A stretch of DNA of 61,424 nucleotides from Lenisia limosa (lineage: Eukaryota > Protista > Breviatea): assembly GCA_001655205.1 (NCBI GenBank), contig LPNZ01003674.1, positions 1-61,424 of the forward strand, written 5' to 3'. A program made the position numbers and the translations under genes. The notes beneath the pieces were generated by a model. That model was not told the DNA's origin. It did not search any database and saw nothing but the letters and a program-made list of their open reading frames with translations. Positions 1-16,258 of this stretch are shown here, one piece after another (position 1 is the stretch's first letter; the number at the start of each line of letters is the position of its first letter).

Positions 1-1796
1 TGGATGTTGAGCCAATGGCCACCTTCCGCGGCCACGTGGCTCCCGTCCTTGCCACGTGCTTCAGTCATGACGGCAATATTGTTGCTTCCGCTTCCCTCGA
101 TGGAGAGGTGGGGCAACAGGCCGTTATCTCGCCATTTTGGTTGGTAATGTGACCCTGTAGATCCGTCTGTGGACAAGCCCCGAGCCCGACACAACTCCCT
201 ACCTCCCCCAGGGCTGCGCTGCCCCGTCATACAGAAAGTCTCTCAAGGGCCACACGTAGGTTATTCTTATTCCCATGGTTCTTTGGATTTTATAAATAGG
301 CACACTTTGGAACAATAAATAATGACATATTCGTTTTTTGTTTATCGAGAATTTTTGTTCTTTTTGGGCAGGAAGTGAACCCTCTCTTTCTCCATGCCGA
401 AGGGGTGGTGAAAGACAAGTTGGGACTAATAACTACAGAGGCGAAAAGTAATTCTTCATGAACTCTGGCCTTCATTTTCTTCATCATTTTCGTCAAACGT
501 GATATATTTATTTCAATTTCAGGTGCTCTTTTTGAGTACTCATTGCTTCAGAGACGCAATTTGGTCTTTGGCTTCGAGTCCGCTGATGCCGCAAATTGCA
601 TCCGCGTCTGCTGACGGTACTGTCCGCGTGTGGGACTACAGCGAGGTCTGTGGCGCTGTCTTTAGGCTTAGGGCATATCTGGGGCCAAAAAGACTGTTAA
701 TATGAAATCAGTCTCTTTGGGCCAACAGGCAAGTCCTAGTTAATGTAGTATTATTGTACACCCCTTGTACCCTTCAAATACCGCGCCTTAGTCACTTCGG
801 ACTGGAAAGACTGATCTACTGACGATTTTTGGGGACAAAGTTCTGCCCAGTGGCAGCCATATCAAATTGTTGTCTAATCGCGGCAGGAGGACTCGCTTGT
901 TTCCGAATGCCAAGCTAACATGGGGGCAGTGACGTCCGTGAAGTTCCTACCTTGTAACCCCCTCCTTATTGTGGCAGCGTAAGGGGCGGATTTTCTTCTA
1001 AATGGCCAAGAATTGACTGACACATTCAGGTACCAGAACGGCAAGATTTGCGTGATCAATAGCCGAAGCGGAGAGATTGAAGCGTCTCATGACACAAACT
1101 GCCAGGTGGGGGTCCGTGATGATGATTTCGGCTGTTCATAGAACTATCAGCATCATCATGTTGGCTTTGCAACACGAAAACCCCTGCTAAATTATGTACC
1201 TTTTTGAGGAGTTTTGTAAATTTAGTCCTTATTGACCAGGGGGGGGGGGCTACTTTTTCTTGATAGAAAGGCTACTAACTTGCCAGATCAACAGCATCGA
1301 CGTCCACCCCACCCTTCCCATGGTCTTCTTGGCTTGTGAGGATCTCACCGTCGTGATCTTCAACCCTGATGAAAGTTGGTGTTTCTCGTCTTCTTTTTTA
1401 TCTTCACTCTCCAGACAAAGTGGTGGAGAAAATTAATGCACACACCGCTGCAGTCGCTGGTGTTGCCTGTGACCCCTCAGGGAACTTCTTCACCTCTTGC
1501 AGTAAGCGCCTTGCTCTCGGATGTCTTTTGTTTTATGCTTTTTAACAGTTGAATTTCGGCCATATGACATAAATGATTTGATCAGGTCACGATTGCTCAT
1601 TGCGATTCTGGGACACCGAAACTCGAGCCTGTTACCATGAGCAGAGTATCCACCGCCAGAGCGGCGACGCCGGCATTAACGTAGGGCTTCTCTCGCCATT
1701 CTTTGTCTCACTCACCCCCAGGCTGTTGCCCTTCACCCCGCACGGTCCTATCTTGCAACGGCTGGTGCTGACTCATCGGTCAAAATCTTCTCCTAA
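1..1796 (+). CDS. STRN: Striatin-family WD40 protein, 3' part (multi-exon, 5' end outside window)
   Basis: Spliced peptides VEPMATFRGHVAPVL, GHT/DAIWSLASS..ASASADGTVRVW, QINSIDVHPTLP, NAHTAAVAGVACDPSG, HDCSLRFWD and AVALHPARSYLATAGADSSVKIFS* follow the striatin C-terminal WD40 order. Stop TAA at 1794-1796. Confidence 0.92.
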
Positions 1797-2210
1797 ACAT
1801 CACCTTTTCACCTTTCTTAAGTTATTTGATATATTATATGTTTTCAGTCAGGTTGGGTATCTTGTAGAGAAGAATAGCTGGTTTCCATTTCATCTCAAGT
1901 TTGGTTTGCAAGTTTTCAAACTCATGTCGAGGGTAGCAACGTGGTCTCAGCAGACAGAAATGTTTGAATGATTCAGGGGGAAGATGGTAATATACGTCCA
2001 AGACGTCCGTAGGCCTCCAAAAAAGATCAGGCATCAGGTTCCAGTCGCGCGAATATTTGAAATTTGAATCAGAGAATTTTGTATTAAATTGTTGTGGTTT
2101 TTGTTGCCAGTTTGTTGCTGAATACTGGTTGAATATTTTAATACAGCTGATTGGTTGGAGAGGGTGAGAAGAAGAGAGATAGGGGAGTTCAGTTTTTGCT
2201 TTTTTCAGCG

Positions 2211-5251: not shown

Positions 5252-8200
5252 TTACCATTTTGACTCGTTCGAAGATATCAGCAAAGCTCTGGATATCTTC
5301 AGAAGGAGGGGTCTCAACAAAGCACTGCGGGGTCTTTGGTGGCGGACCAAGTTTACCTTCATGAGTGAACCAAGCACCTGGGACGGTAGGCCTACCTCGG
5401 TAAGATGACCAGTGAGATCCTGAGCCTTTTTTAAAGAGGCCTTGGACGGTGGTGACCGGCGGCCCTCCAATTGCAGGTATTACTGGTCCTGATACAGATG
5501 ACTTTATCAGGTTGTTAGGAGGATCTCAAGTGAAAGCCAAACACACCTGGGATTTCTGAGGATGCAGGTCTTCTCGCTCCTTCAGCAATGTGATGGTCAA
5601 AGAGTGGTAACGGGGTATCTACACCAATAAATCAACAGAAGAAATATAAGCAATAAAGTGAGTTTGACTGGCAACCTGGGGTGGGGGGAGCGATGGGGGT
5701 GAGTGGTCTATTTTTCTTTTGAAGAACAGCATAAGCAGGAGTCCGTGAGAGATACGTGTCCTGTATCACATTGGTGTTCATATCTGAAGAGTCATCAGCA
5801 GAATTCAACTGACTTGGAAGACTTCGGGCGCAAATTGGCTTTGGTTCTGCTTTGATGGGGCCTAGAGGCAGCGGTCGGAGTGAAGGTAGTTTTGAGAGAT
5901 TGGGAATGGGGAATAAGGGGGTACGGGGAGGAGTGCTGTTCCTGTCATCCGAAGACAACGGGGTGACAGAGATTGGCTCCAGGTCTTCCTCAGGGTTGTT
6001 GAGCTGGTCATACTCTGTCACAACAGAAAGGGGAACAAACTGAATTATTATTTGACATATTAGATTTAGCTACATGTGTGTTACATAAATGATTGATATA
6101 TACTACTACAATGTATATGATATAATATGGTTTGTATAATAGTATTATACAGCATATTAAATTACAATGTGCTTTTGATCAAACATTCGTTTCATAAGAC
6201 CCACAAACTTGGGGGTTCGTACACGATTCTGGAGAGGGGGATCTTGAAGGCTTTGGTGAACTTTGTTCAATCGCCTTATAATAAAGTGGGGATGGGGCTC
6301 TAATACTTGCTGGACTGCTAACAGCCACTTCAGAAGAGAGGTTACACTCAACTACCTCAGGTTCAACGTTAACCATACCCGCTTCATCTCCCGTCTTCTC
6401 TTCTGCTGTGCTTGGGGATTCCTTTGGATTCTCCTGAAGACAGTTTCCTTTCAGTGCTGTTGTCGATACCTGGCTGATTGGCTTGAGCACTCTGACACTG
6501 AGGACTGCGGTAGTGAGGTCTTCGGAAGAGGAGGGAACTGAACTGTCGGCCAAAATCATAGGCTTAAGAATGGGGCTTAGGCTATTTCGAAGCGGTTTGA
6601 TGCGCGTGACCATTGAAAGTTGTGGAGTGGGGGAGACGGATGAGACACACGTGACTTTCTTCTTTGGTGGAGATTCCTTAACAATTATTGGCTCGGAGGG
6701 GATAGCAACTGGTCGATGATGGATAATTGGCCCGGAAGAGAACGACCCCCTTCGTTTCATTTTCTGATCTGAAATCATGGGGAGCTTGTCATCAGGCCGA
6801 ATCTCCATAGCAGAAGAAGATCTTTGTGAGTTAATGGAAGTAAGGTGAGACCCAGTCAATAGACAACATCACTAATGGCCAGCCAACCTTATGCCCTCAT
6901 TCGACGCTAAAATTCGATTTGGTGGTACACTCTGTGACCGGGACTTAATGATGATTTCCTAAATATTCGTAAGGCCTTGTCGTATCAAAGTCAATGATAC
7001 TTAGAGAACGGAATTCAAGCAACCCGGCGTAGCAAACCTTGATAGGAAGCCTTGCGGGGGGCGACGCTAGTGGAGTCATTTCTATGGAGTCTTCAGAAGC
7101 ATTGCTTGAAGATGAAGACGCAACGGAACTTGTGGGGACTATCGGAGATGATTCGCTGAATGGACACTTCATTGCCGGGCTCTTGGTGGCAAGAACCTTG
7201 ACTTGCCTTCCAGCCCCTTGGGCCACACGGCTGTTCCGTCGGTTCATGATCTTGCGCTGGGGTGACGCCGGCGTAAAGACTCGTTTTGGCGACACTAATC
7301 GGTAATAGCAGATTGTGTAATTATGAAAGGCCATTCACACCATCACGTTTAAATCGGTTATATTACAATTTAATGTGCAGATACCTCCCTGTTTCAGAAA
7401 CAAATAGTAGCCCTCAGTGGCTTACTTGGAGTAGGAGGCTGGATTGTTGGCGGCGGGAGTTCTCCCAAATGACATGTCCTCACTGCACTTCGCGCGGCCT
7501 ATTGTATAAAATGGATACAACGGTGGGGGGAAATAGCGCTCACCTTGTTCAGTAAAACCGAAGTGGAATCTGATGATATTGAGCTCTTCAGTGATATTTC
7601 ACGAAACTAAAACCATCAATTTTGAAACTTCATATTTCATAAAACATCTTCAAAGAACCAGTTCCTACATTCCACTCAATTGGCTTCATGCTACACATGT
7701 CACGAGGGAGACCAGAGCCAATTCGAATGCTGTCCACCATATGTCCGACTTAGGGGGTCAAAAAGTGGTGTAACTGAAACCTTGGAATAAAAACCCACTT
7801 TTCACGTAAGACTCGACATAGCATTTGACGAGAGTATCAAAGCTGTCAAACTCAAAATCCTTGCCTCCGAGCCCATCATCACGTGACAAACCGAGAGACC
7901 CCCAAAGAGCCCCACATTTCACTGCAAGAACTATGTGTCTGATCAATTAGTGGTCATAAAGAAACCTCACACTTTCAAGACATACCTGTATTCTTTTCCT
8001 GAGCTTGTGATGGATGTGAATGAAATGGGAAGCCTCTGCAATTGCGAAATAGGTGCAGTCAAGTATCTGAATTACTAAGAACATATCATGAGTGGCGAGT
8101 GAATCCCTGTGTTTTCAGTCCAAAAAAAGGCAAGTTAATGTCACTCTCATGGGTGTATTGAAAAAAGCCGTTGTTTTTAGGACCAAGTGAATCCATAATT

Positions 8201-9060: not shown

Positions 9061-9502
9061 ATGGTTAGAACTCCATCATTATTGAATACTTTCAAGCATA
9101 TCCTCTTCACATCTCAGCCTGCCCAAGTGATAGACTATGCTGTCATTTGAGCGGCTTTTGTGTTTGTCAATGGTAGGCCCAGTAGCCGTGGTGAATTGAC
9201 GTCAGTGACAAGTCGTTGTTGGGTATGGTGTAAGTCCGTCTGGGATGGTGTGGTGTGTGATGCAGGTTTGGGTGGAGTGTGGTGGGTTGAGGTTGGTTGG
9301 AATTTGTCAGTCGGTACAAGTTCGGGCCTTCCCCCCCCCCCCCCCNNNNNNNNNNNNNNNNNNNNNNNNNNNNNNNNNNNNNNNNNNNNNNNNNNNNNNN
9401 NNNNNNNNNNNNNNNNNNNNNNNNNNNNNNNNNNNNNNNNNNNNNNNNNNNNNNNNNNNNNNCAAAAATTCAAAAAAAAAGCACAACCCCTTTTGCTGTG
9501 TT

Positions 9503-11497
9503 ATGATGGAGCATCCCTCAAAAATTGTTGTTTACGTTCGAGGCGGGGGGGAAATTGCGTCTGCGGTCATTCACCGCCTGAGAAAATGCGGATTCTCAGT
9601 GGTATGCAGTGAAATAGCAAAGCCGCTTGCTGTCAGACGACAGGTATTTGGGATTTGGGGCAATGTTAAATCAGTAAGTACAATGGTTGGACCCCCTCTT
9701 CTCTTTTCACTTTCACCATCATTTTGATTTATCTGTTGCTGATATCAATAACTTATGCTCGTTTAGGTATCATTTTGTGAAGTTGTCTTGGGCAAGACAG
9801 CTGAAGTTGAAGGAGTGAAAGGAACCTTTGCCGAGACCTTTGATGACGTAACTTCTGCATGGAAAATGGGGCAGGTTTGTTGGATTCAGGAATGATGTCT
9901 TTCTGAGCCGAATAAAAACATCTTTCAAAGAGGGTTTATGCAAAAACACGATTTTCTTCTCAGAACCTCGCTTTACCGTATTTATAAAGAAGAGCTGTAT
10001 ATAAGCGCTGCTGAATATTACTGTCAACTTTTGATGAAGCGCATAGAAAAATTCTTACGACGTCAGTTGATTTTTTTTTGATTTTTTTTTTCAAAAATTA
10101 GGAGGTCACTAAAAATTGAAAAATAGTCATTTTTCTTTAGGTTGTAAAAGAACGAAGTATTCCCAAAAAAATATCATGCCTTTCTTTGACCAATGGTGAT
10201 TTCAAGCATTTTCATCTACGTTTCAGTTCGACAATAGCACACTGTTTGTTTTTGTAATTGAAGTAGGTCCCAGTCATCGTGGACCCCAATATGGAGATGC
10301 TCTCTGTCATCAAACCGGACTTTGTTGTTGACTGTATCCTCGCAAAAAAGAACCTTGGAAGTTTGTGGAGAAGGGTCTGGCCTTGAGTTTGCCAGTGTCT
10401 TCTAAACATTACAGCCAAGCTGAAGCAAGGTTCTCGTGGTGTCATCGCTCTCGGCCCTGGCTTCCAGGTAGGCTTGACTGTTGATTCTATCTTTGGTTAA
10501 CATCGGACAACATGTGTCATTTTGGGGTGGTTTAAAATAATAATAAAAAAGCATTCCTGTTTCGTTTTCGTTTTGATTATTGGGTAGTTTGGCCGTTTGT
10601 ATCACTCATCATCAGGTCGGAAGGGATTGTGACGTGATTATCGAAACGAACCGAGGTCATCATTTGGGCCGAGTTTTCAGCAAAATTGGTGAAGAGGCTG
10701 CCCCCAACACCGGAATACCTGGTATGTATGCATTTCCATCATGGTCAGTCTTACGCCTCAGGAGCGATTATGGGCGTATCAGCGGACAGAGTACTGAGAG
10801 CCCCAGTTAGTGGAACAATTTGCCATGTCAAGAATATTGGAGATATGGTTGAAAAGGTGAGCGCAACTGACTGTCTGTTGAGCTGGGTGTTTTCAAACGA
10901 TACAAATTACTATGTAAACATCTTGGTTATTTTCATGTTTCCAGGATGAGGTGATCTGTACTGTTGATGGACATAAGGTTCGAAGTCTCATTTCAGGTTT
11001 GAGTCATTATTATGTTGTCGCATGGTTTGAATAATTCTGATGTGGAAATATCAGTTGCAGCACTAATTCATTCAGGTATCATCAGGGGCCTGATTATGAA
11101 TGGAGCTATTGTGAAAGAAAAACTAAAAATTGGAGATGTTGACCCTCGCGGTGATAGCACAGCAGTCCACACCATTAGGTATGAATGTTGTCTTTCTACT
11201 TTACCTTGAAATCGTATCACATAGATATTATGATATGATAGTATTACCCATATTATTCATATTATATAGTATAAATGATATGTTATAATTACACATGATA
11301 CTCTTTTTACATTGGCTTATCCCGGTCACTGTATGTGTGTTTATTATGCCAAAGTCACATTACAAATGGTAACAGTTTCAAAGTCGTAGAAGTAACGATG
11401 TGTGTACTCTAATATGTATGTTATTCACCCTTGTAGTGACAAGTCCCGCAATATTTCTGGAGGAGTGCTTCAGGCCATTCTTGAAAGAATGCTGTAG
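9503..11497 (+). CDS. yqeB: Selenium-dependent molybdenum hydroxylase system protein YqeB (short EF2563-type, about 270 aa), 9 exons / 8 GT-AG introns
   Basis: Spliced: VRGGGEIASAVIHRL..EIAKPLAVRRQVSF..VPVIVDP..VVDCILAKKNLGT..VIALGPGF..VIIETNRGHHLGRV..PNTGIPG..RVLRAP..GIIRGLI..KIGDVDPRG..TISDKSRNISGGVLQAIL*. All exons join in frame; stop TAG at 11495-11497. Confidence 0.95.
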
Positions 11498-11824
11498 TTA
11501 TGGTATCCTCGTATTTCTGTTTTTTTCTGTTGTTTCGGTTCTTTTTTGTTTCTCTTCCAATTTCATCTGTTTCTGAATATTCAAATCAAGCTTATCAAAT
11601 CAGTGTTTTCATACAACCCCTTGATGCTGCCTTGATGTACACTTGATCCTTCATTTCTTGAAACAAATTCAAACACTACAGGCAAGAACCAAACGATCAC
11701 CAATGATCTTCTGCCTGTTTTTGTTCCAATCAAAATTTTTCATTTATATTATTCATTAATTTTTATTATCGATACACAACAACACATACGATAAATGATG
11801 AAGAAACGAAGCGAGGATGCTTGA

Positions 11825-14800
11825 ATGGAAGAGGATATCTTGAGTGACACGGAGTTCTTCGAAATCCTCGCTGGTTTGTGGAAATAAGTATCGGAGTAGG
11901 GTCTTTCGAATTTTTGTGATAATAGTTCTAGATGGTCCAAGAAGATAGCTAATGACAGGATAGCTTTTCGGCTGAAATGTCTATTGAAGACACCAAGCCC
12001 CTCTCTCCCAATTTACCACGACAAGGTATGCATCACAAAAAAGAAGCGGGGCTCTCTGACTTGCTCTTCTTCCCTTTCTTATTCAGGACTTCACTCTTCT
12101 TGACCTTCTAGATTCGTTCCACTCTGAATCTGTTATCGATGCTGAGGTTGAAGGTTTGATCCAGGGCGAATGGCTCTTGGTTTGTTAATTCGGTTTTTAG
12201 AGAAAGACGGATACATTAAATGATGAGAAACACCTACAATTATGCTCCTCTTCCACATCTCCACAACATAATATCTTCCCCACATCCCCCACCTCAGCCA
12301 ACAGAGTTGATTTGGGGCTTTTTTTTTTTTNNNNNNNNNNNNNNNNNNNNNNNNNNNNNNNNNNNNNNNNNNNNNNNNNNNNNNNNNNNNNNNNNNNNNN
12401 NNNNNNNNNNNNNNNNNNNGGTCTTCTAACATGCTTCTGGTGCCTCAACTCGAAATGTCACAAGCCCGCGGACTCAAAGTTGAACCGCAGTCCCACTGCG
12501 GAACAGAAAAGAGAACGTGAGGCTGGAGAAGGTTCTACCACTATTGTTTTTATTGATTTGGCCTAACATTTCAGAGCCTGATGTTGTGGTGTTCATCAAC
12601 AAAAAGAGCGGTGGAGGTCAAGGGGCAGAGTTGATGGAAGAGCTTGACAAGGTTTGGGTAAACGTCACTTTGAACTTATTTTGAAGGAGCTTGGACCTCA
12701 CAGTGTTGTTGACTTGTTTGCCCTTGATGATGAAGAAGAACCAACTGGTGGGTGGATCGGTGCTGTTTGACAAAATCTTAGCACCTAACTTCTTATGATT
12801 TGAAACTCACTGTGAGCTAAAGTTCCTCTTGATACTGTCCTTTAATCGAAATTTATCAATTTAGAATATGAAAGTCTTGACAGTTCTGAAATTACCGTTG
12901 TCGCAACAGACTCTGCTGAAAAAGTGGGCAATTGAATGGAAATCATATGTAGCTATATCATTTAAAAGTTCTGTTCAAAGGAAGCAGTAAGGGCTTCTTC
13001 CAAGGATGCCAAAGTTTTAAAGGGGAGGGGATGGCAATCTTGATACTATGACCTCCGCCTGACATTACAGGAAGCTCACAGTGTTGCCTCAAGACTGAAC
13101 AACCTTGCTCCAGATGTTCGTGTCGGTATGTTGAGTGGTTCTGAGGGATATCAAGGGAGAAGATCGAAAGACTTACATTGGTATTGAGTTGATCTGTTGA
13201 TCTTTTCAGTTGCCGGCGGCGGGGACAGCACATTCAGCTGGGTCTTGGACCTCTTGGAGGGCGGTGACTCCAGGCCTCCAGTTGCCCTTCTTCCTCTAGG
13301 TAGGCTGCTCAGCTTTGCATCTCGCACAGGCTTGGTTCATTTGTTCAGGAGTTGGAAATGAGATGTCCCGTGCACTTGGCTGGGGGAAGGGGTGGGGCTC
13401 CAATGACAATCTGCATTACTACCTTGAGCAGGTGAGTGTACGTTGTCGTATTTTGTTACAATCCTCAGTCACCATTACCATCTAGGTTGACCACGGAGAA
13501 ATTGTACCAGTGGATTGTTGGAATGTTGATTTTCTTCCTTTACCTCCTGATGTTCTTGCTGATACTTTCAATTCCCCACTGTAAGTTTGAATGTGCATCT
13601 ATCACTTGTTATAAATATTGAAGAAATAGGGAACATTCTTCTTTTTTTGAAGTCACCATGCCACAATGAGTGTTGGAAATTAGCAGGCAAGTTGACACCT
13701 CAGGGCCCATTCACAGGACCATCTTCCGCCATTGGTCATCTCAAAAACGCCAGACATGCAGCCACCAATAGTGGTACACCCCAAAGCGCAACCGCCCATC
13801 CCCATCACAGCCCACAGAATGCATCGGAGGGATGTCGACCTTCGATCTCGACGGGAGCCTTCGTGCCCTCCAGTAGGCCGTTTGGCTCCACAAGGCATTT
13901 CAAATAATATTGCAAAGCTATTTTTGTTTCAGTTTTGACTCTTCAGAAATCGTGTTCTTTTAACTAATGTATACTATACCGTAGTATATAATACATATGA
14001 TATGATATGATATAAACTAGCTCCAAGTATTTATAATCTATCACCATCCATAATGATGTGCGTGCCAACTTCGCAATACCGGGAAATACTGTAATTCCCA
14101 ATTATCACATCACTCACCCGCACCTCCACTCCCAGTTTCGGCGAAATAGTGAACACCTCCGCCGCCATACCCGTTCCATGACGCTTGATTCCAATGATGT
14201 TCTTCGATTGCCTAATAGGGAACTCTCTGAGTTTCCTAAAAGGGAAAGCTCTCTTTCCAACACACCGCAATCCAAGAACTTTACTAGACCGTTTCCACCT
14301 CCTTCCCTATCCTCCCCTGAAACGCCTTCTTCCACCGTCTCACTCCCGCAGCCCAAACCCAGTAAGCCAAAATTTACACACGATACTGTTACTTTGAGGA
14401 TATGAAAATACATTAAATGTAAAAGAATGCGTCTCATAGATTATAAGTACTAACCATTCAGCAACCCCATTAACCAGCCCCGTCAGGAGAAGATGTCCTC
14501 CATCCCCCCCAAGTAGGCAAAAATGCATGATTGTTCGCTAATGTTACAGAAGTGACTGATCATGATTGTAATTCAAATCATTGTGATTAAAATATTATTT
14601 TATAAGACGCAATAAAATATTTAATTTTGATCAGCAGTCCCCCTTGTAAACATTCAGGACCGCCACGACTAGAGAAGACGCCTCCTGAGTTGGGAGGGTC
14701 TCAAAAGATTTCCCCATTCCAAGACCCTTCAATCAAGTAAGCTGTTTCCCCACTGTTGTTTACCTGACACTTTAGTCCACCGCGAAGGTCCATGTCTCTT

Positions 14801-16258
14801 CCCTCTATCCCTCTTCCGCCGCCGGACACCCCTCCCGTAATCAACATAATGCAGAACCACAATAGCAGTGACGCCTGGGGCCCGGCCCTGGACGGTTTAG
14901 CGGATCCGATCAACAAGCGCCTGATGGCGTTTATGAGTATTGGTGTGGACGCGCATGTGGCGTGGCGCTTCCATTGTCTCAGAAATGAGGTGTGTACAGT
15001 GAAGGGGCCTATATTCAACTTGGTGCTGCTCACATAGAGTTTGGTGTTGCCCGTATAGAATGTGTTTTTGATGTTATATTTTTTACATTTGTTTAGAACA
15101 AGAAGTTTGCCCAGCGAACACGAAGTGTCAACAAAATGGTCCATGTTTGGTAGGCTCTTGGACTGCCTATTCCATGTGTTGCTACTCTAATCGTACAGGT
15201 ATGGAATTTCCTGTGCAGTTTTTAAGGACCCTCGTCTGACTGAACATTTATCTTTGGAGGTTTGCTTGTCATCAATTGAAATGTTTCAATCTCTGTTGTA
15301 TCATATTGAAGAATGAAATCAAATACGGTTTTTTAAGCTTTAGGTGGATGGCAAGGCAATTGATATTCCGCCACAAATTCGCAACATCCATATCCTCAAT
15401 ATTCCAACGTAAGTTTCTGGCTGAGGTTCTCAATTTGCATGTTCTTTTTAATAGAGCAGGACCGGTGACGGTGTCGATCTCTTTAATCCGCAGCAGCAAT
15501 CAAAAAAGGTTGGACAAATCATTCTGGCCTTCTCTTAAACTGCTGACTTAACTGTGACTTTTGACTTGTTTAGAATGAGTTACAAAACTGGGTTGTCCCT
15601 ACACTAAATGACCAATTGCTGGAAGTGAGGGGACTTCACTATCTTCACTTATGATATTTACTTATTCCTGGGGGACCTTCGCACTTACCCATGAACAGGT
15701 TGTCGGCACTTCTGGTCCGCTGAACTTGCTATCAATCAGGTTCCATATGCGCCATGCTTACAGACTAGCTCAGGTTGGTGCTGGTGCTGGCTTGCTTTTA
15801 CTCTGACTCTCCTAATCATCCTAGTTTCAATAGAGACTTCCCTGCAAAACAATCCTAATCAGCCATTTTCTAGGGAAGGAGTATCAAAATCGTACACAAA
15901 TCCCCCCATCTCATTCCGACTCAAATCGAAGGGTTGGTTCTTCCGTGTTAAATGTGGACGTCTACGAACTGTGGTTTGATGATATATATAGGGAACCGTT
16001 TCTGCTTCCTCCCTCAGTCATGAATATCACTTTTGACCGATCGATCGAGATGATCCAGGGAGCTGGCAAGACCCGAGGCGTGACGCCGGTCCTTCAACGC
16101 CATAAGTAAGCCTATTGCCATCTGTTCACTCCTGATTTCCGATTTGTTGCGTGGACTCATTTTTCAGGCGAGAGGAGGACAAGGTATCTATCACATTACC
16201 CCCAGCCAAGCCTATGAGGCTTCCCAAGCATCAGTCCCTGTCACCTTCCGCTAAATAG
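11825..16258 (+). CDS. DGK: Diacylglycerol kinase-like protein (catalytic and accessory domains split by a long Ser/Pro/His-rich insert); spans N gap 12331-12419
   Basis: VVFINKKSGGGQG, AGGGDSTFSWVL, PPVALLPLGVGNEMSRALGWG, FMSIGVDAHVAWRFH, VDGKAIDIP..ILNIPT, DQLLEVVG and GEPFLLPP match the DAGKc/DAGKa motif order. Confidence 0.87.

What the first reader, a model, noticed from the sequence alone, without database searches (positions are those of the whole stretch)
9503..11497. Intron-containing eukaryotic YqeB: a Se-cofactor (selenium-dependent molybdenum hydroxylase) pathway in a protist?
Seen: a complete gene of about 270 aa in 9 in-frame exons with 8 canonical introns, embedded between vasohibin and DGK, so it is not bacterial contamination. 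Family motifs are all retained (RGGGEIAS, ILAKKNLG, GPGF, ETNRGHHLGR, PNTGIPG, KIGDVDPR, TISDKSRNISGGVL). Only about 7 residues precede the first strand, so there is no obvious organellar targeting peptide. Established: YqeB with YqeC and SelD marks the third selenium-utilisation trait, the labile Se cofactor of xanthine-dehydrogenase-like molybdoenzymes, found in mostly anaerobic prokaryotes and distinct from selenocysteine and selenouridine. Inference: an old lateral transfer, implying this eukaryote may mature Se-dependent molybdenum hydroxylases in the cytosol and live in low oxygen. I do not know of this trait being characterised in a eukaryote, but I cannot search the literature.
Basis: partly seen in the sequence, partly recalled or inferred. 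Interest (0 to 1): 0.9.

Follow-up and report, generated by a model that had tools for sequence, protein, structure and literature searches.

The report
Intron-split YqeB gene in a breviate
An oxygen-avoiding protist, Lenisia limosa, carries and expresses a bacterial-type gene (YqeB) that bacteria need to put selenium into certain molybdenum enzymes, and three other anaerobic protists hold related copies, so a selenium trait described as prokaryotic may also exist in eukaryotes.

Summary
Window 9503-11497 (+) carries a 9-exon gene with 8 GT..AG introns, encoding 270 aa. A polyA RNA run has a 907-nt contig with all 8 joints exactly as modelled; the DNA run has none. An independent EukProt transcript protein (Lenisia limosa P008124) equals the spliced model. 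It scores 312.9 bits on NCBIfam TIGR03309 YqeB (cut-off 220). It keeps all 12 invariant family residues. Its model matches E. coli YqeB 264-527 at TM 0.95.

No bacterial protein is more than 53% identical. The nearest rows in the tree are eukaryotic: Barthelona sp. PCE, Pygsuia biforma and Kipferlia bialata, together with a Candidatus Tectomicrobia YqeB. That bacterial gene sits in a MocA-like/YqeB/YqeC/XdhC/CoxD/CoxE operon. One origin for the four eukaryotic genes is not rejected (p-AU 0.43).

Lenisia is therefore not the first eukaryote with YqeB. A 2014 Spironucleus genome paper noted YqeB-family genes in passing. Nobody has characterised the trait in a eukaryote, and reviews treat it as prokaryotic.

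I did not test the pathway claim. This scan had noted YqeC, XdhC and selenophosphate synthetase on other pieces of this genome, but not YqeB. No target molybdenum hydroxylase is known. Verdict: a real, expressed, laterally acquired YqeB; its selenium-cofactor function is plausible but inferred.

The parts
9503..9643 (+). Exon 1: start codon, strand 1 and the Gly-rich loop RGGGEIAS, then the PLAVRR motif
   Evidence: TIGR03309 positions 1-37, E 4.7e-10; joint 9641/9765, cut +2
9644..9766 (+). Intron 1 (123 nt, phase 0, GT..AG); same alignment position and phase as an intron of the Kipferlia bialata gene
9767..9874 (+). Exon 2
   Evidence: (profile 39-73)
9875..10266 (+). Intron 2 (392 nt); holds a repeated element at about 9931-10003
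   Evidence: DNA depth 225 against 26-30, with contig breaks
10267..10360 (+). Exon 3 (ILAKKNLG motif)
   Evidence: (profile 75-105)
10415..10467 (+). Exon 4 (ALGPGF motif)
10616..10721 (+). Exon 5 (ETNRGHHLGR and PNTGIPG motifs)
   Evidence: (profile 124-155)
10762..10856 (+). Exon 6 (start of the barrel domain)
   Evidence: (profile 158-187)
10945..10996 (+). Exon 7
11076..11178 (+). Exon 8 (GIIRGL and KIGDVDPR motifs)
   Evidence: (profile 206-238)
11437..11497 (+). Exon 9 (SDKSRNISGGVL motif and the stop codon)
11498..11599 (+). 3' UTR as far as the RNA contig reaches
   Evidence: record 9 ends at 11599
7761..7946 (-). Context: an exon of the upstream neighbour, a vasohibin-family gene (eukaryotic)
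   Evidence: PF14822, 30.6 bits, cut-off 24
12559..15034 (+). Context: downstream neighbour, a probable diacylglycerol kinase (exon fragments only)
   Evidence: DAGK_cat 15.1 bits and DAGK_acc 20.3 bits, collinear, each below threshold

Best explanation
Shown: a nuclear, spliced, polyadenylated gene of the anaerobic breviate Lenisia limosa encodes a full-length orthologue of bacterial YqeB (TIGR03309). It has two domains, a Rossmann-like domain and a biotinyl/lipoyl-like barrel, and no N-terminal extension. Inferred from the tree and composition: it came from bacteria by an old lateral transfer. The donor was close to a YqeB found in a Candidatus Tectomicrobia MocA-YqeB-YqeC-XdhC-CoxD-CoxE operon. 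The gene belongs to a small group shared with three other anaerobic protists: Barthelona, Pygsuia and Kipferlia. Inferred from bacterial genetics and comparative genomics: the protein works in the cytosol as a maturation factor for a molybdenum hydroxylase. It would act on the molybdenum cofactor together with an XdhC-type chaperone and YqeC, using selenophosphate from SelD, to install the labile selenium ligand. That would give this protist a selenium-dependent purine or N-heterocycle hydroxylase suited to anoxia.
For: Gene model and splicing. Independent transcript protein of Lenisia. Family membership: 312.9 bits against a cut-off of 220 over profile positions 1-255 of 256. It keeps 12 of 12 invariant and 26 of 27 nearly invariant residues. 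The AF2 model has pLDDT 97 and matches E. coli YqeB 264-527 at TM 0.95, rmsd 1.5 A. Eukaryotic setting: a vasohibin neighbour; CDS GC 0.477 and GC3 0.45, like the other long open frames in the window. Origin: the best bacterial identity is 53% across 5.8 billion proteins. The nearest tree rows are Barthelona, Pygsuia, Kipferlia and Tectomicrobia, in a seven-row group with support 80/92. The Barthelona copy lies on a 767-kb contig among eukaryotic genes, and the Kipferlia copy has 6 introns. Function: in C. difficile, deleting yqeB gives the same growth defect as the selD mutants on xanthine and urate (PMC11448449). All gut strains carrying the urate-degradation gene cluster hold YqeBC and SelD (bioRxiv 10.1101/2025.04.24.650524). 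Bacterial fusions join YqeB to YqeC, XdhC, a MocA-like transferase and cysteine desulfurase. Earlier notes report intron-bearing YqeC, XdhC and a selenophosphate synthetase in this genome.
Against: I did not verify any partner gene. No xanthine-dehydrogenase-family target enzyme has been noted for this genome. The biochemical activity of YqeB is unknown even in bacteria. In C. difficile the yqeC deletion had no phenotype. The site-heterogeneous tree does not recover the four eukaryotes as one clade, and its bootstrap had not converged. Eukaryote-to-eukaryote identities (43-49%) are no higher than eukaryote-to-Tectomicrobia identities (48-54%). Cytosolic location rests only on the lack of an N-terminal extension.
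Confidence: 0.55

Rival explanations
1. Orphan or repurposed gene. YqeB is real and expressed, but the selenium-cofactor trait is incomplete in Lenisia. The protein would then serve another role, for instance ordinary handling of the sulfurated molybdenum cofactor or an unrelated nucleotide-dependent reaction.
For: No target molybdenum hydroxylase is noted for this genome. Xu et al. describe no partner genes or target enzyme for the YqeB-family genes of Spironucleus. The Pygsuia and Kipferlia models lack the N-terminal Gly-rich loop, which may hint at relaxed or altered function in part of the group. The biochemistry of YqeB is unknown.
Against: The Lenisia protein keeps every invariant residue and the full fold despite long residence in the nucleus (8 introns). 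Earlier notes list YqeC, XdhC and a selenophosphate synthetase in the same genome. The only genetic data tie YqeB to selenium-dependent purine use.
Confidence: 0.25
2. Same function, different history. Each protist took YqeB separately from related bacteria, rather than through one acquisition followed by spread between eukaryotes.
For: The careful tree splits the eukaryotes into two pairs, with a Tectomicrobia row and two probably bacterial metagenome rows among them. The eukaryotic proteins are no closer to each other than to the Tectomicrobia protein. The Barthelona gene has no introns.
Against: Each pair joins a breviate with a metamonad, which no host phylogeny or simple ecology predicts. 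The quick tree recovers a four-row eukaryote clade. The AU test does not reject one clade (p 0.43). Lenisia and Kipferlia share one intron position and phase.
Confidence: 0.3
3. Bacterial contamination or misassembly: the YqeB sequence is not part of the protist genome.
Against: Eight spliceosomal introns are removed precisely in polyA RNA. Neighbouring genes on both sides are eukaryotic. One DNA contig spans 9959-11800.
Confidence: 0.01
4. Ancient vertical inheritance: YqeB was present in early eukaryotes and was lost almost everywhere.
For: It occurs in two distant supergroups (Obazoa and Metamonada), and one intron position is shared.
Against: Among the rows whose source I could look up, only anaerobic protists carry it. 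The eukaryotic rows sit inside bacterial diversity next to one bacterial lineage. The two breviates do not pair with each other.
Confidence: 0.03

Closest known systems
Bacterial YqeB / EF2563 family (NCBIfam TIGR03309), e.g. C. difficile CD630_34780 and the C-terminal half of E. coli K-12 YqeB (Q46808)
   Same: Same family by a full-length HMM score above the curated cut-off. Same invariant residues. Same predicted fold (TM 0.95 to E. coli YqeB residues 264-527). Same single-domain length as most bacterial members, about 270 aa.
   Different: It is encoded in a eukaryotic nucleus with 8 spliceosomal introns and a polyA transcript. It is not in an operon. It is at most 53% identical to any bacterial member. 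It lacks the N-terminal XdhC part that E. coli YqeB carries.
YqeB-family genes of Spironucleus salmonicida (Xu et al. 2014, PMC3916229)
   Same: A YqeB-family gene in an anaerobic or microaerophilic protist that also has selenophosphate synthetase. That paper suggested selenium use beyond selenocysteine.
   Different: A different supergroup. I could not fetch the Spironucleus sequences, so their relation to the Lenisia group is unknown. That paper gives no phylogeny, partner genes or expression analysis.
YqeB homologues of Barthelona sp. PCE (KAL0232333.1), Pygsuia biforma (EukProt EP00033 P001390) and Kipferlia bialata (GIQ85753.1)
   Same: These are the nearest tree neighbours. All come from anaerobic protists. 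The Kipferlia gene has introns, one at the same position and phase as Lenisia intron 1.
   Different: Only 44-49% identical to the Lenisia protein. The Barthelona gene has no introns. The Pygsuia and Kipferlia models lack the first strand and the Gly-rich loop. None is discussed in the literature I could search; two are labelled hypothetical and one carries only an automatic name.
Candidatus Tectomicrobia maturation operon (L011): MocA-like, YqeB, YqeC, XdhC, MoxR/CoxD-like AAA, VWA CoxE
   Same: Its YqeB is the closest named bacterial relative, 50% identical. The trio YqeB, YqeC and XdhC matches the three bacterial-type genes that scan notes report in the Lenisia genome.
   Different: In the bacterium the genes are contiguous. 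In Lenisia they lie on different pieces. Co-transfer has not been tested.
XdhC-type molybdenum-cofactor chaperones (PF02625 / PF13478)
   Same: A working analogy: an accessory protein that holds the cofactor while its terminal ligand is installed, then hands it to a xanthine-dehydrogenase-family enzyme. YqeB is often fused to, or next to, XdhC, and JGI labels YqeB proteins as xanthine dehydrogenase accessory factor.
   Different: Pfam gives no XdhC hit for this protein. YqeB is a separate family with an added barrel domain.

Membership tests
YqeB (NCBIfam TIGR03309, equivalog) | Whole-protein HMM score at or above the curated cut-off of 220 bits, over the full profile | tested here: met
   312.9 bits, E 1.6e-93, profile positions 1-255 of 256. 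Six exon pieces hit in collinear order.
YqeB (NCBIfam TIGR03309, equivalog) | Family-invariant residues retained | tested here: met
   12 of 12 invariant and 26 of 27 nearly invariant columns of a 79-sequence alignment are kept. The one exception is G157 replaced by E.
YqeB (NCBIfam TIGR03309, equivalog) | Same fold as E. coli YqeB | tested here: met
   AF2 model with pLDDT 97.3. TM 0.95, rmsd 1.5 A and 43% identity to Q46808 residues 264-527. No solved structure of the family exists for comparison.
Selenium-cofactor utilisation trait (third selenium trait; markers SelD + YqeB + YqeC, PMC9312934) | YqeB present | tested here: met
Selenium-cofactor utilisation trait (third selenium trait; markers SelD + YqeB + YqeC, PMC9312934) | YqeC present in the same genome | not tested
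   Only earlier scan notes: s1-196978 (followed up by another agent) and s1-194068. I had no tool left that reaches the rest of this genome.
Selenium-cofactor utilisation trait (third selenium trait; markers SelD + YqeB + YqeC, PMC9312934) | SelD (selenophosphate synthetase) present in the same genome | not tested
   Only the earlier first-reader note s1-211727.
Selenium-cofactor utilisation trait (third selenium trait; markers SelD + YqeB + YqeC, PMC9312934) | A xanthine-dehydrogenase-family molybdenum hydroxylase to receive the cofactor | not tested
   No scan note mentions xanthine or molybdopterin for this genome. The library holds no paper linking Lenisia to selenium metabolism, and the two breviate/xanthine dehydrogenase hits I read say nothing about Lenisia.
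Selenium-cofactor utilisation trait (third selenium trait; markers SelD + YqeB + YqeC, PMC9312934) | Labile, non-selenocysteine selenium needed for enzyme activity | not testable with these tools
   Needs 75Se labelling and enzyme assays.
Laterally acquired gene in a eukaryote | Nested within bacterial diversity, with eukaryotic gene structure and eukaryotic neighbours | tested here: met
   Trees; introns and polyA RNA; neighbours; host-like GC content.

The most novel reading that the evidence does not exclude
Anaerobic protists of two supergroups (breviates and metamonads) share a laterally acquired selenium/molybdenum-cofactor maturation module: YqeB with YqeC and XdhC. It would have been taken once from an operon like that of Candidatus Tectomicrobia and then passed between eukaryotes. 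In that case the third selenium utilisation trait, treated as prokaryote-only, operates in the eukaryotic cytosol and supports anaerobic purine or N-heterocycle breakdown.
Probability: 0.3. Interest if true: 0.8.

Novelty: new member of a known kind. Interest (0 to 1): 0.6.

Why it matters
Reviews of selenium biology describe three uses of selenium. The third, a labile selenium ligand on molybdenum hydroxylases, is treated as prokaryotic (PMC9312934). Its maturation genes only began to be tested genetically in 2024 (PMC11448449).

An intron-bearing, expressed and fully conserved YqeB in Lenisia, with relatives in Barthelona, Pygsuia and Kipferlia, shows that the marker gene has settled in several anaerobic eukaryotes. 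It adds a metabolic item to the set of genes that anaerobic protists exchange laterally.

It also gives a concrete test. If YqeC, XdhC, SelD and a bacterial-type hydroxylase are confirmed in the same cells, selenium-dependent purine catabolism would exist in a eukaryote. Selenium budgets and selenoproteome surveys of protists would then be missing a class.

Tried and rejected
- **Pfam on the exons and the whole protein:** no family reaches threshold; only a weak Biotin_lipoyl hit. Pfam appears to have no YqeB model.
- **The search for related loci with single exons:** A stop-free 74-aa frame through exon 1 worked and gave seven bacterial loci.
- **Word search with a bacterial YqeB:** returned only its own close relatives.
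- **Word search with the Lenisia protein:** listed 120 rows that all looked bacterial and hid the eukaryotic relatives. These came out only through the exhaustive representative search, the tree and the cluster look-up.
- **Single-sequence AlphaFold:** useless, pLDDT 35. Repeating it with an alignment gave pLDDT 97.
- **PDB fold search:** no whole-protein match (TM at most 0.33), only Rossmann and biotinyl-domain parts.
- **Gene neighbourhoods of bacterial loci L001 and L002:** no hydroxylase cluster, so uninformative.
- **Exact look-ups of P0121 and P0216 in the contig index:** found nothing.
- **Twenty further cluster look-ups:** found no more eukaryotes.
- **Literature:** searches for Lenisia or Barthelona with selenium, and for breviates with xanthine dehydrogenase, found nothing relevant.
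- **Contamination:** considered and rejected on the splicing evidence.
- **Not run:** I could not pass the typed spliced protein to the tools. I used exon references, and later the database copy P0121.
Full report
**1. The observation**

They are 9503-9643, 9767-9874, 10267-10360, 10415-10467, 10616-10721, 10762-10856, 10945-10996, 11076-11178 and 11437-11497. Every intron starts with GT and ends with AG. The CDS is 813 nt and the product 270 aa.

Intron lengths are 123, 392, 54, 148, 40, 88, 79 and 258 nt, and intron GC is 0.34 against 0.48 for the CDS.

**2. Expression and splicing**

Two public runs hold this stretch. One is a DNA-like run with 99% of the sampled words. The other is a polyA metatranscriptome run with 27%, about the exon share.

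Laid on the window, the RNA run gives one 907-nt contig. It covers 9518-11599 and skips exactly the eight predicted introns, all GT..AG. The DNA run shows no joints, and one of its contigs spans 9959-11800 without a break.

A database search limited to exon 1 returned a 269-aa EukProt Trinity protein, P0121. It is identical to my spliced model minus the first Met. Its EukProt identifier is EP01086_Lenisia_limosa_P008124. This names the organism and agrees with the label another agent of this scan had used.

**3. Is it eukaryotic DNA?**

Upstream on the minus strand, an exon at 7761-7946 hits Pfam Vasohibin above threshold. WD40 exons lie further upstream. Downstream, two collinear exon fragments hit DAGK_cat and DAGK_acc below threshold.

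The CDS has GC 0.477 and GC3 0.45, like the other long open frames of the window (0.45-0.51). Together with the splicing, this excludes contamination.

**4. Family membership**

Six exon pieces hit NCBIfam TIGR03309 (YqeB) in order along the profile. The whole protein scores 312.9 bits against a curated cut-off of 220, covering profile positions 1-255 of 256.

In a 79-sequence alignment (A1) the protein keeps all 12 invariant columns and 26 of 27 nearly invariant ones. Pfam has no model that reaches threshold.

An AlphaFold model built with that alignment has mean pLDDT 97.3. It superposes on residues 264-527 of E. coli K-12 YqeB with TM 0.95 and rmsd 1.5 A.

No solved structure matches the whole protein. 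The parts that match are Rossmann-type domains for the N-terminal half and biotinyl/lipoyl-type barrels for residues about 150-238.

The first strand starts at residue 8, as in bacterial members, so there is no presequence. The frame stays open between the upstream N-run (9347-9442) and the ATG. Both transcript assemblies start at about the ATG, so an extra 5' exon is unlikely but not excluded.

**5. Relatives**

A word-indexed search of 5.8 billion proteins with P0121 found itself, then a flat list of hits at 47-53% identity. Every named hit was bacterial: Deltaproteobacteria, Chloroflexota, Bacillota, Treponema and Tectomicrobia.

An exhaustive HMMER search of 1.84 billion cluster representatives found 2587 hits at E up to 0.001, and none was more than 50% identical. 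Many are fusions.

The Atlas look-up shows bacterial fusions of the YqeB domain with:
- YqeC
- XdhC
- a MocA-like nucleotidyltransferase
- cysteine desulfurase

A quick tree of 176 rows placed the Lenisia protein with P0218 (SH-aLRT 92), then P0216 and P0355 (82), then P0178 (97). The cluster look-up identified them:
- P0218 is KAL0232333.1 of Barthelona sp. PCE.
- P0216 is Pygsuia biforma EP00033 P001390.
- P0355 is Kipferlia bialata GIQ85753.1.
- P0178 is from a Candidatus Tectomicrobia MAG.

The Barthelona gene is intronless. It lies on a 767-kb contig between a CLC channel, a phospholipase B, a MIF4G protein and a kinase. The Kipferlia gene lies beside an LRR protein and has six GT..AG introns.

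**6. How solid is the grouping?**

A careful tree of 74 rows under LG+C20+F+G4 keeps a seven-row group with support 80/92. The group holds:
- Lenisia + Barthelona (84/86)
- Pygsuia + Kipferlia (95/63) with Tectomicrobia (73/89)
- two metagenome proteins, P0122 and P0123

P0123 sits 26 nt downstream of a thioredoxin gene on its contig, so it is probably bacterial.

The four eukaryotes are not one clade in that tree, and its bootstrap had not converged. An AU test does not reject holding them together (delta lnL 5.6, p-AU 0.43).

Pairwise identities among the eukaryotes are 43-49%, no higher than their identities to the Tectomicrobia protein, 48-54%.

One intron, phase 0 after VRRQ, is at the same alignment position in Lenisia and Kipferlia. 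With 8 and 6 introns over about 780 possible sites, the rough chance of at least one coincidence is 0.06. It is higher at a CAG|GT site.

A single acquisition followed by spread among anaerobic protists is therefore the simplest reading, but it is not shown. Separate transfers from related donors remain open.

**7. What the nearest bacterium tells us**

The Tectomicrobia gene sits in an operon. In order, it encodes:
- a MocA-like NTP_transf_3 protein
- YqeB
- YqeC
- XdhC
- a MoxR/CoxD-like AAA protein
- a VWA CoxE protein

This is a maturation cluster for a xanthine-dehydrogenase-family or CO-dehydrogenase-family enzyme.

Earlier notes of this scan report several related genes on other pieces of this genome:
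- an intron-bearing YqeC (s1-196978, followed up by another agent; s1-194068)
- a bacterial-type XdhC (s1-211564)
- a selenophosphate synthetase that is itself a selenoprotein (s1-211727)

I could not reach those pieces, so they stay leads. They match the operon's content and predict co-transfer.

No note mentions a xanthine-dehydrogenase-type enzyme.

**8. What is known**

- A search for YqeB and YqeC in Lokiarchaeota found none (PMC4989117).
- Johnstone and Self 2024 showed that deleting yqeB in C. difficile gives the same growth defect as selD mutants on xanthine and urate, while deleting yqeC had no phenotype (PMC11448449).
- A 2025 preprint links YqeBC and SelD to the selenium-dependent 2,8-dioxopurine pathway.
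- Prior art for eukaryotes: Xu et al. 2014 wrote that Spironucleus salmonicida has three identical homologues of the gene shared by orphan-SelD genomes, 'previously not detected in any eukaryotic genome'. Their supplement names it 'YqeB family'.
- UniRef also labels the Kipferlia protein automatically.
- I found nothing on selenium-cofactor genes in breviates or barthelonids.

**9. Mechanism**

Shown: the gene, its transcript, the family, the fold and the phylogenetic neighbourhood.

Inferred: YqeB binds a nucleotide-bearing ligand through its Rossmann-like domain (Gly-rich loop RGGGEIAS). It would work beside XdhC and YqeC on the molybdenum cofactor, with selenophosphate as the selenium donor. 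This happens before the cofactor is inserted into a hydroxylase, and takes place in the cytosol.

The inference rests on bacterial genetics, on fusions and on operon context, not on biochemistry.

**10. Verdict**

This is a new eukaryotic member of a known bacterial family. There is one passing literature precedent, and a small clade of anaerobic-protist genes had not been described before. Whether the selenium trait works in these cells is open and directly testable.

Noticed in passing
window 9644-9766 and L010:154-229: Lenisia intron 1 and the first intron of the Kipferlia bialata YqeB gene sit at the same alignment position and phase (phase 0, after VRRQ). The other 7 Lenisia and 5 Kipferlia intron positions differ. 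The rough chance of one coincidence is about 0.06, and it is higher at a CAG|GT site.
   Followed up: partly
P0216 (Pygsuia biforma) and P0355 (Kipferlia bialata; L010:61-1348): Both protein models start about 16 residues later than the Lenisia and Barthelona proteins. They lack strand 1 and the Gly-rich loop of the Rossmann-like domain. The Kipferlia gene touches a contig end, so its truncation may be an artefact. The Pygsuia ORF is labelled complete.
   Followed up: partly
L011:7113-13521 (Candidatus Tectomicrobia MAG, JACPUC010000025.1): The closest named bacterial YqeB lies in an operon: MocA-like NTP_transf_3, YqeB, YqeC, XdhC, MoxR/CoxD-like AAA, VWA CoxE. The YqeB, YqeC and XdhC trio matches the bacterial-type genes that scan notes report in the Lenisia genome.
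   Followed up: partly
window 9931-10003 (inside intron 2): DNA-run contigs pile up and break here (word depth 225 against 26-30, with many loose ends). A short dispersed repeat probably sits inside the intron.
   Followed up: no
window 9334-9442, about 12.3 kb, 18.9 kb, 22.0 kb, 24.5 kb, 49.4 kb: Several N-runs are visibly flanked by homopolymer C or G (Pro or Gly runs in the translated frames), for example at about 9.3, 12.3, 18.9, 24.5 and 49.4 kb. This looks like a scaffolding or assembler artefact rather than biology.
   Followed up: no
model m711d993053a4 (P0121): The YqeB family has no solved structure. The confident model is a Rossmann-like domain plus a biotinyl/lipoyl-type barrel (residues about 150-238). 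No PDB entry matches it as a whole.
   Followed up: partly
L008:8001-8822 (Barthelona sp. PCE, JAUFOR010000005.1): An intronless YqeB homologue, annotated only as a hypothetical protein, in the 10-Mb genome of a free-living metamonad. It keeps the full N-terminal motif.
   Followed up: partly
window 499-1971 (+): WD40-repeat exons of another intron-rich gene upstream of the vasohibin gene.
   Followed up: no
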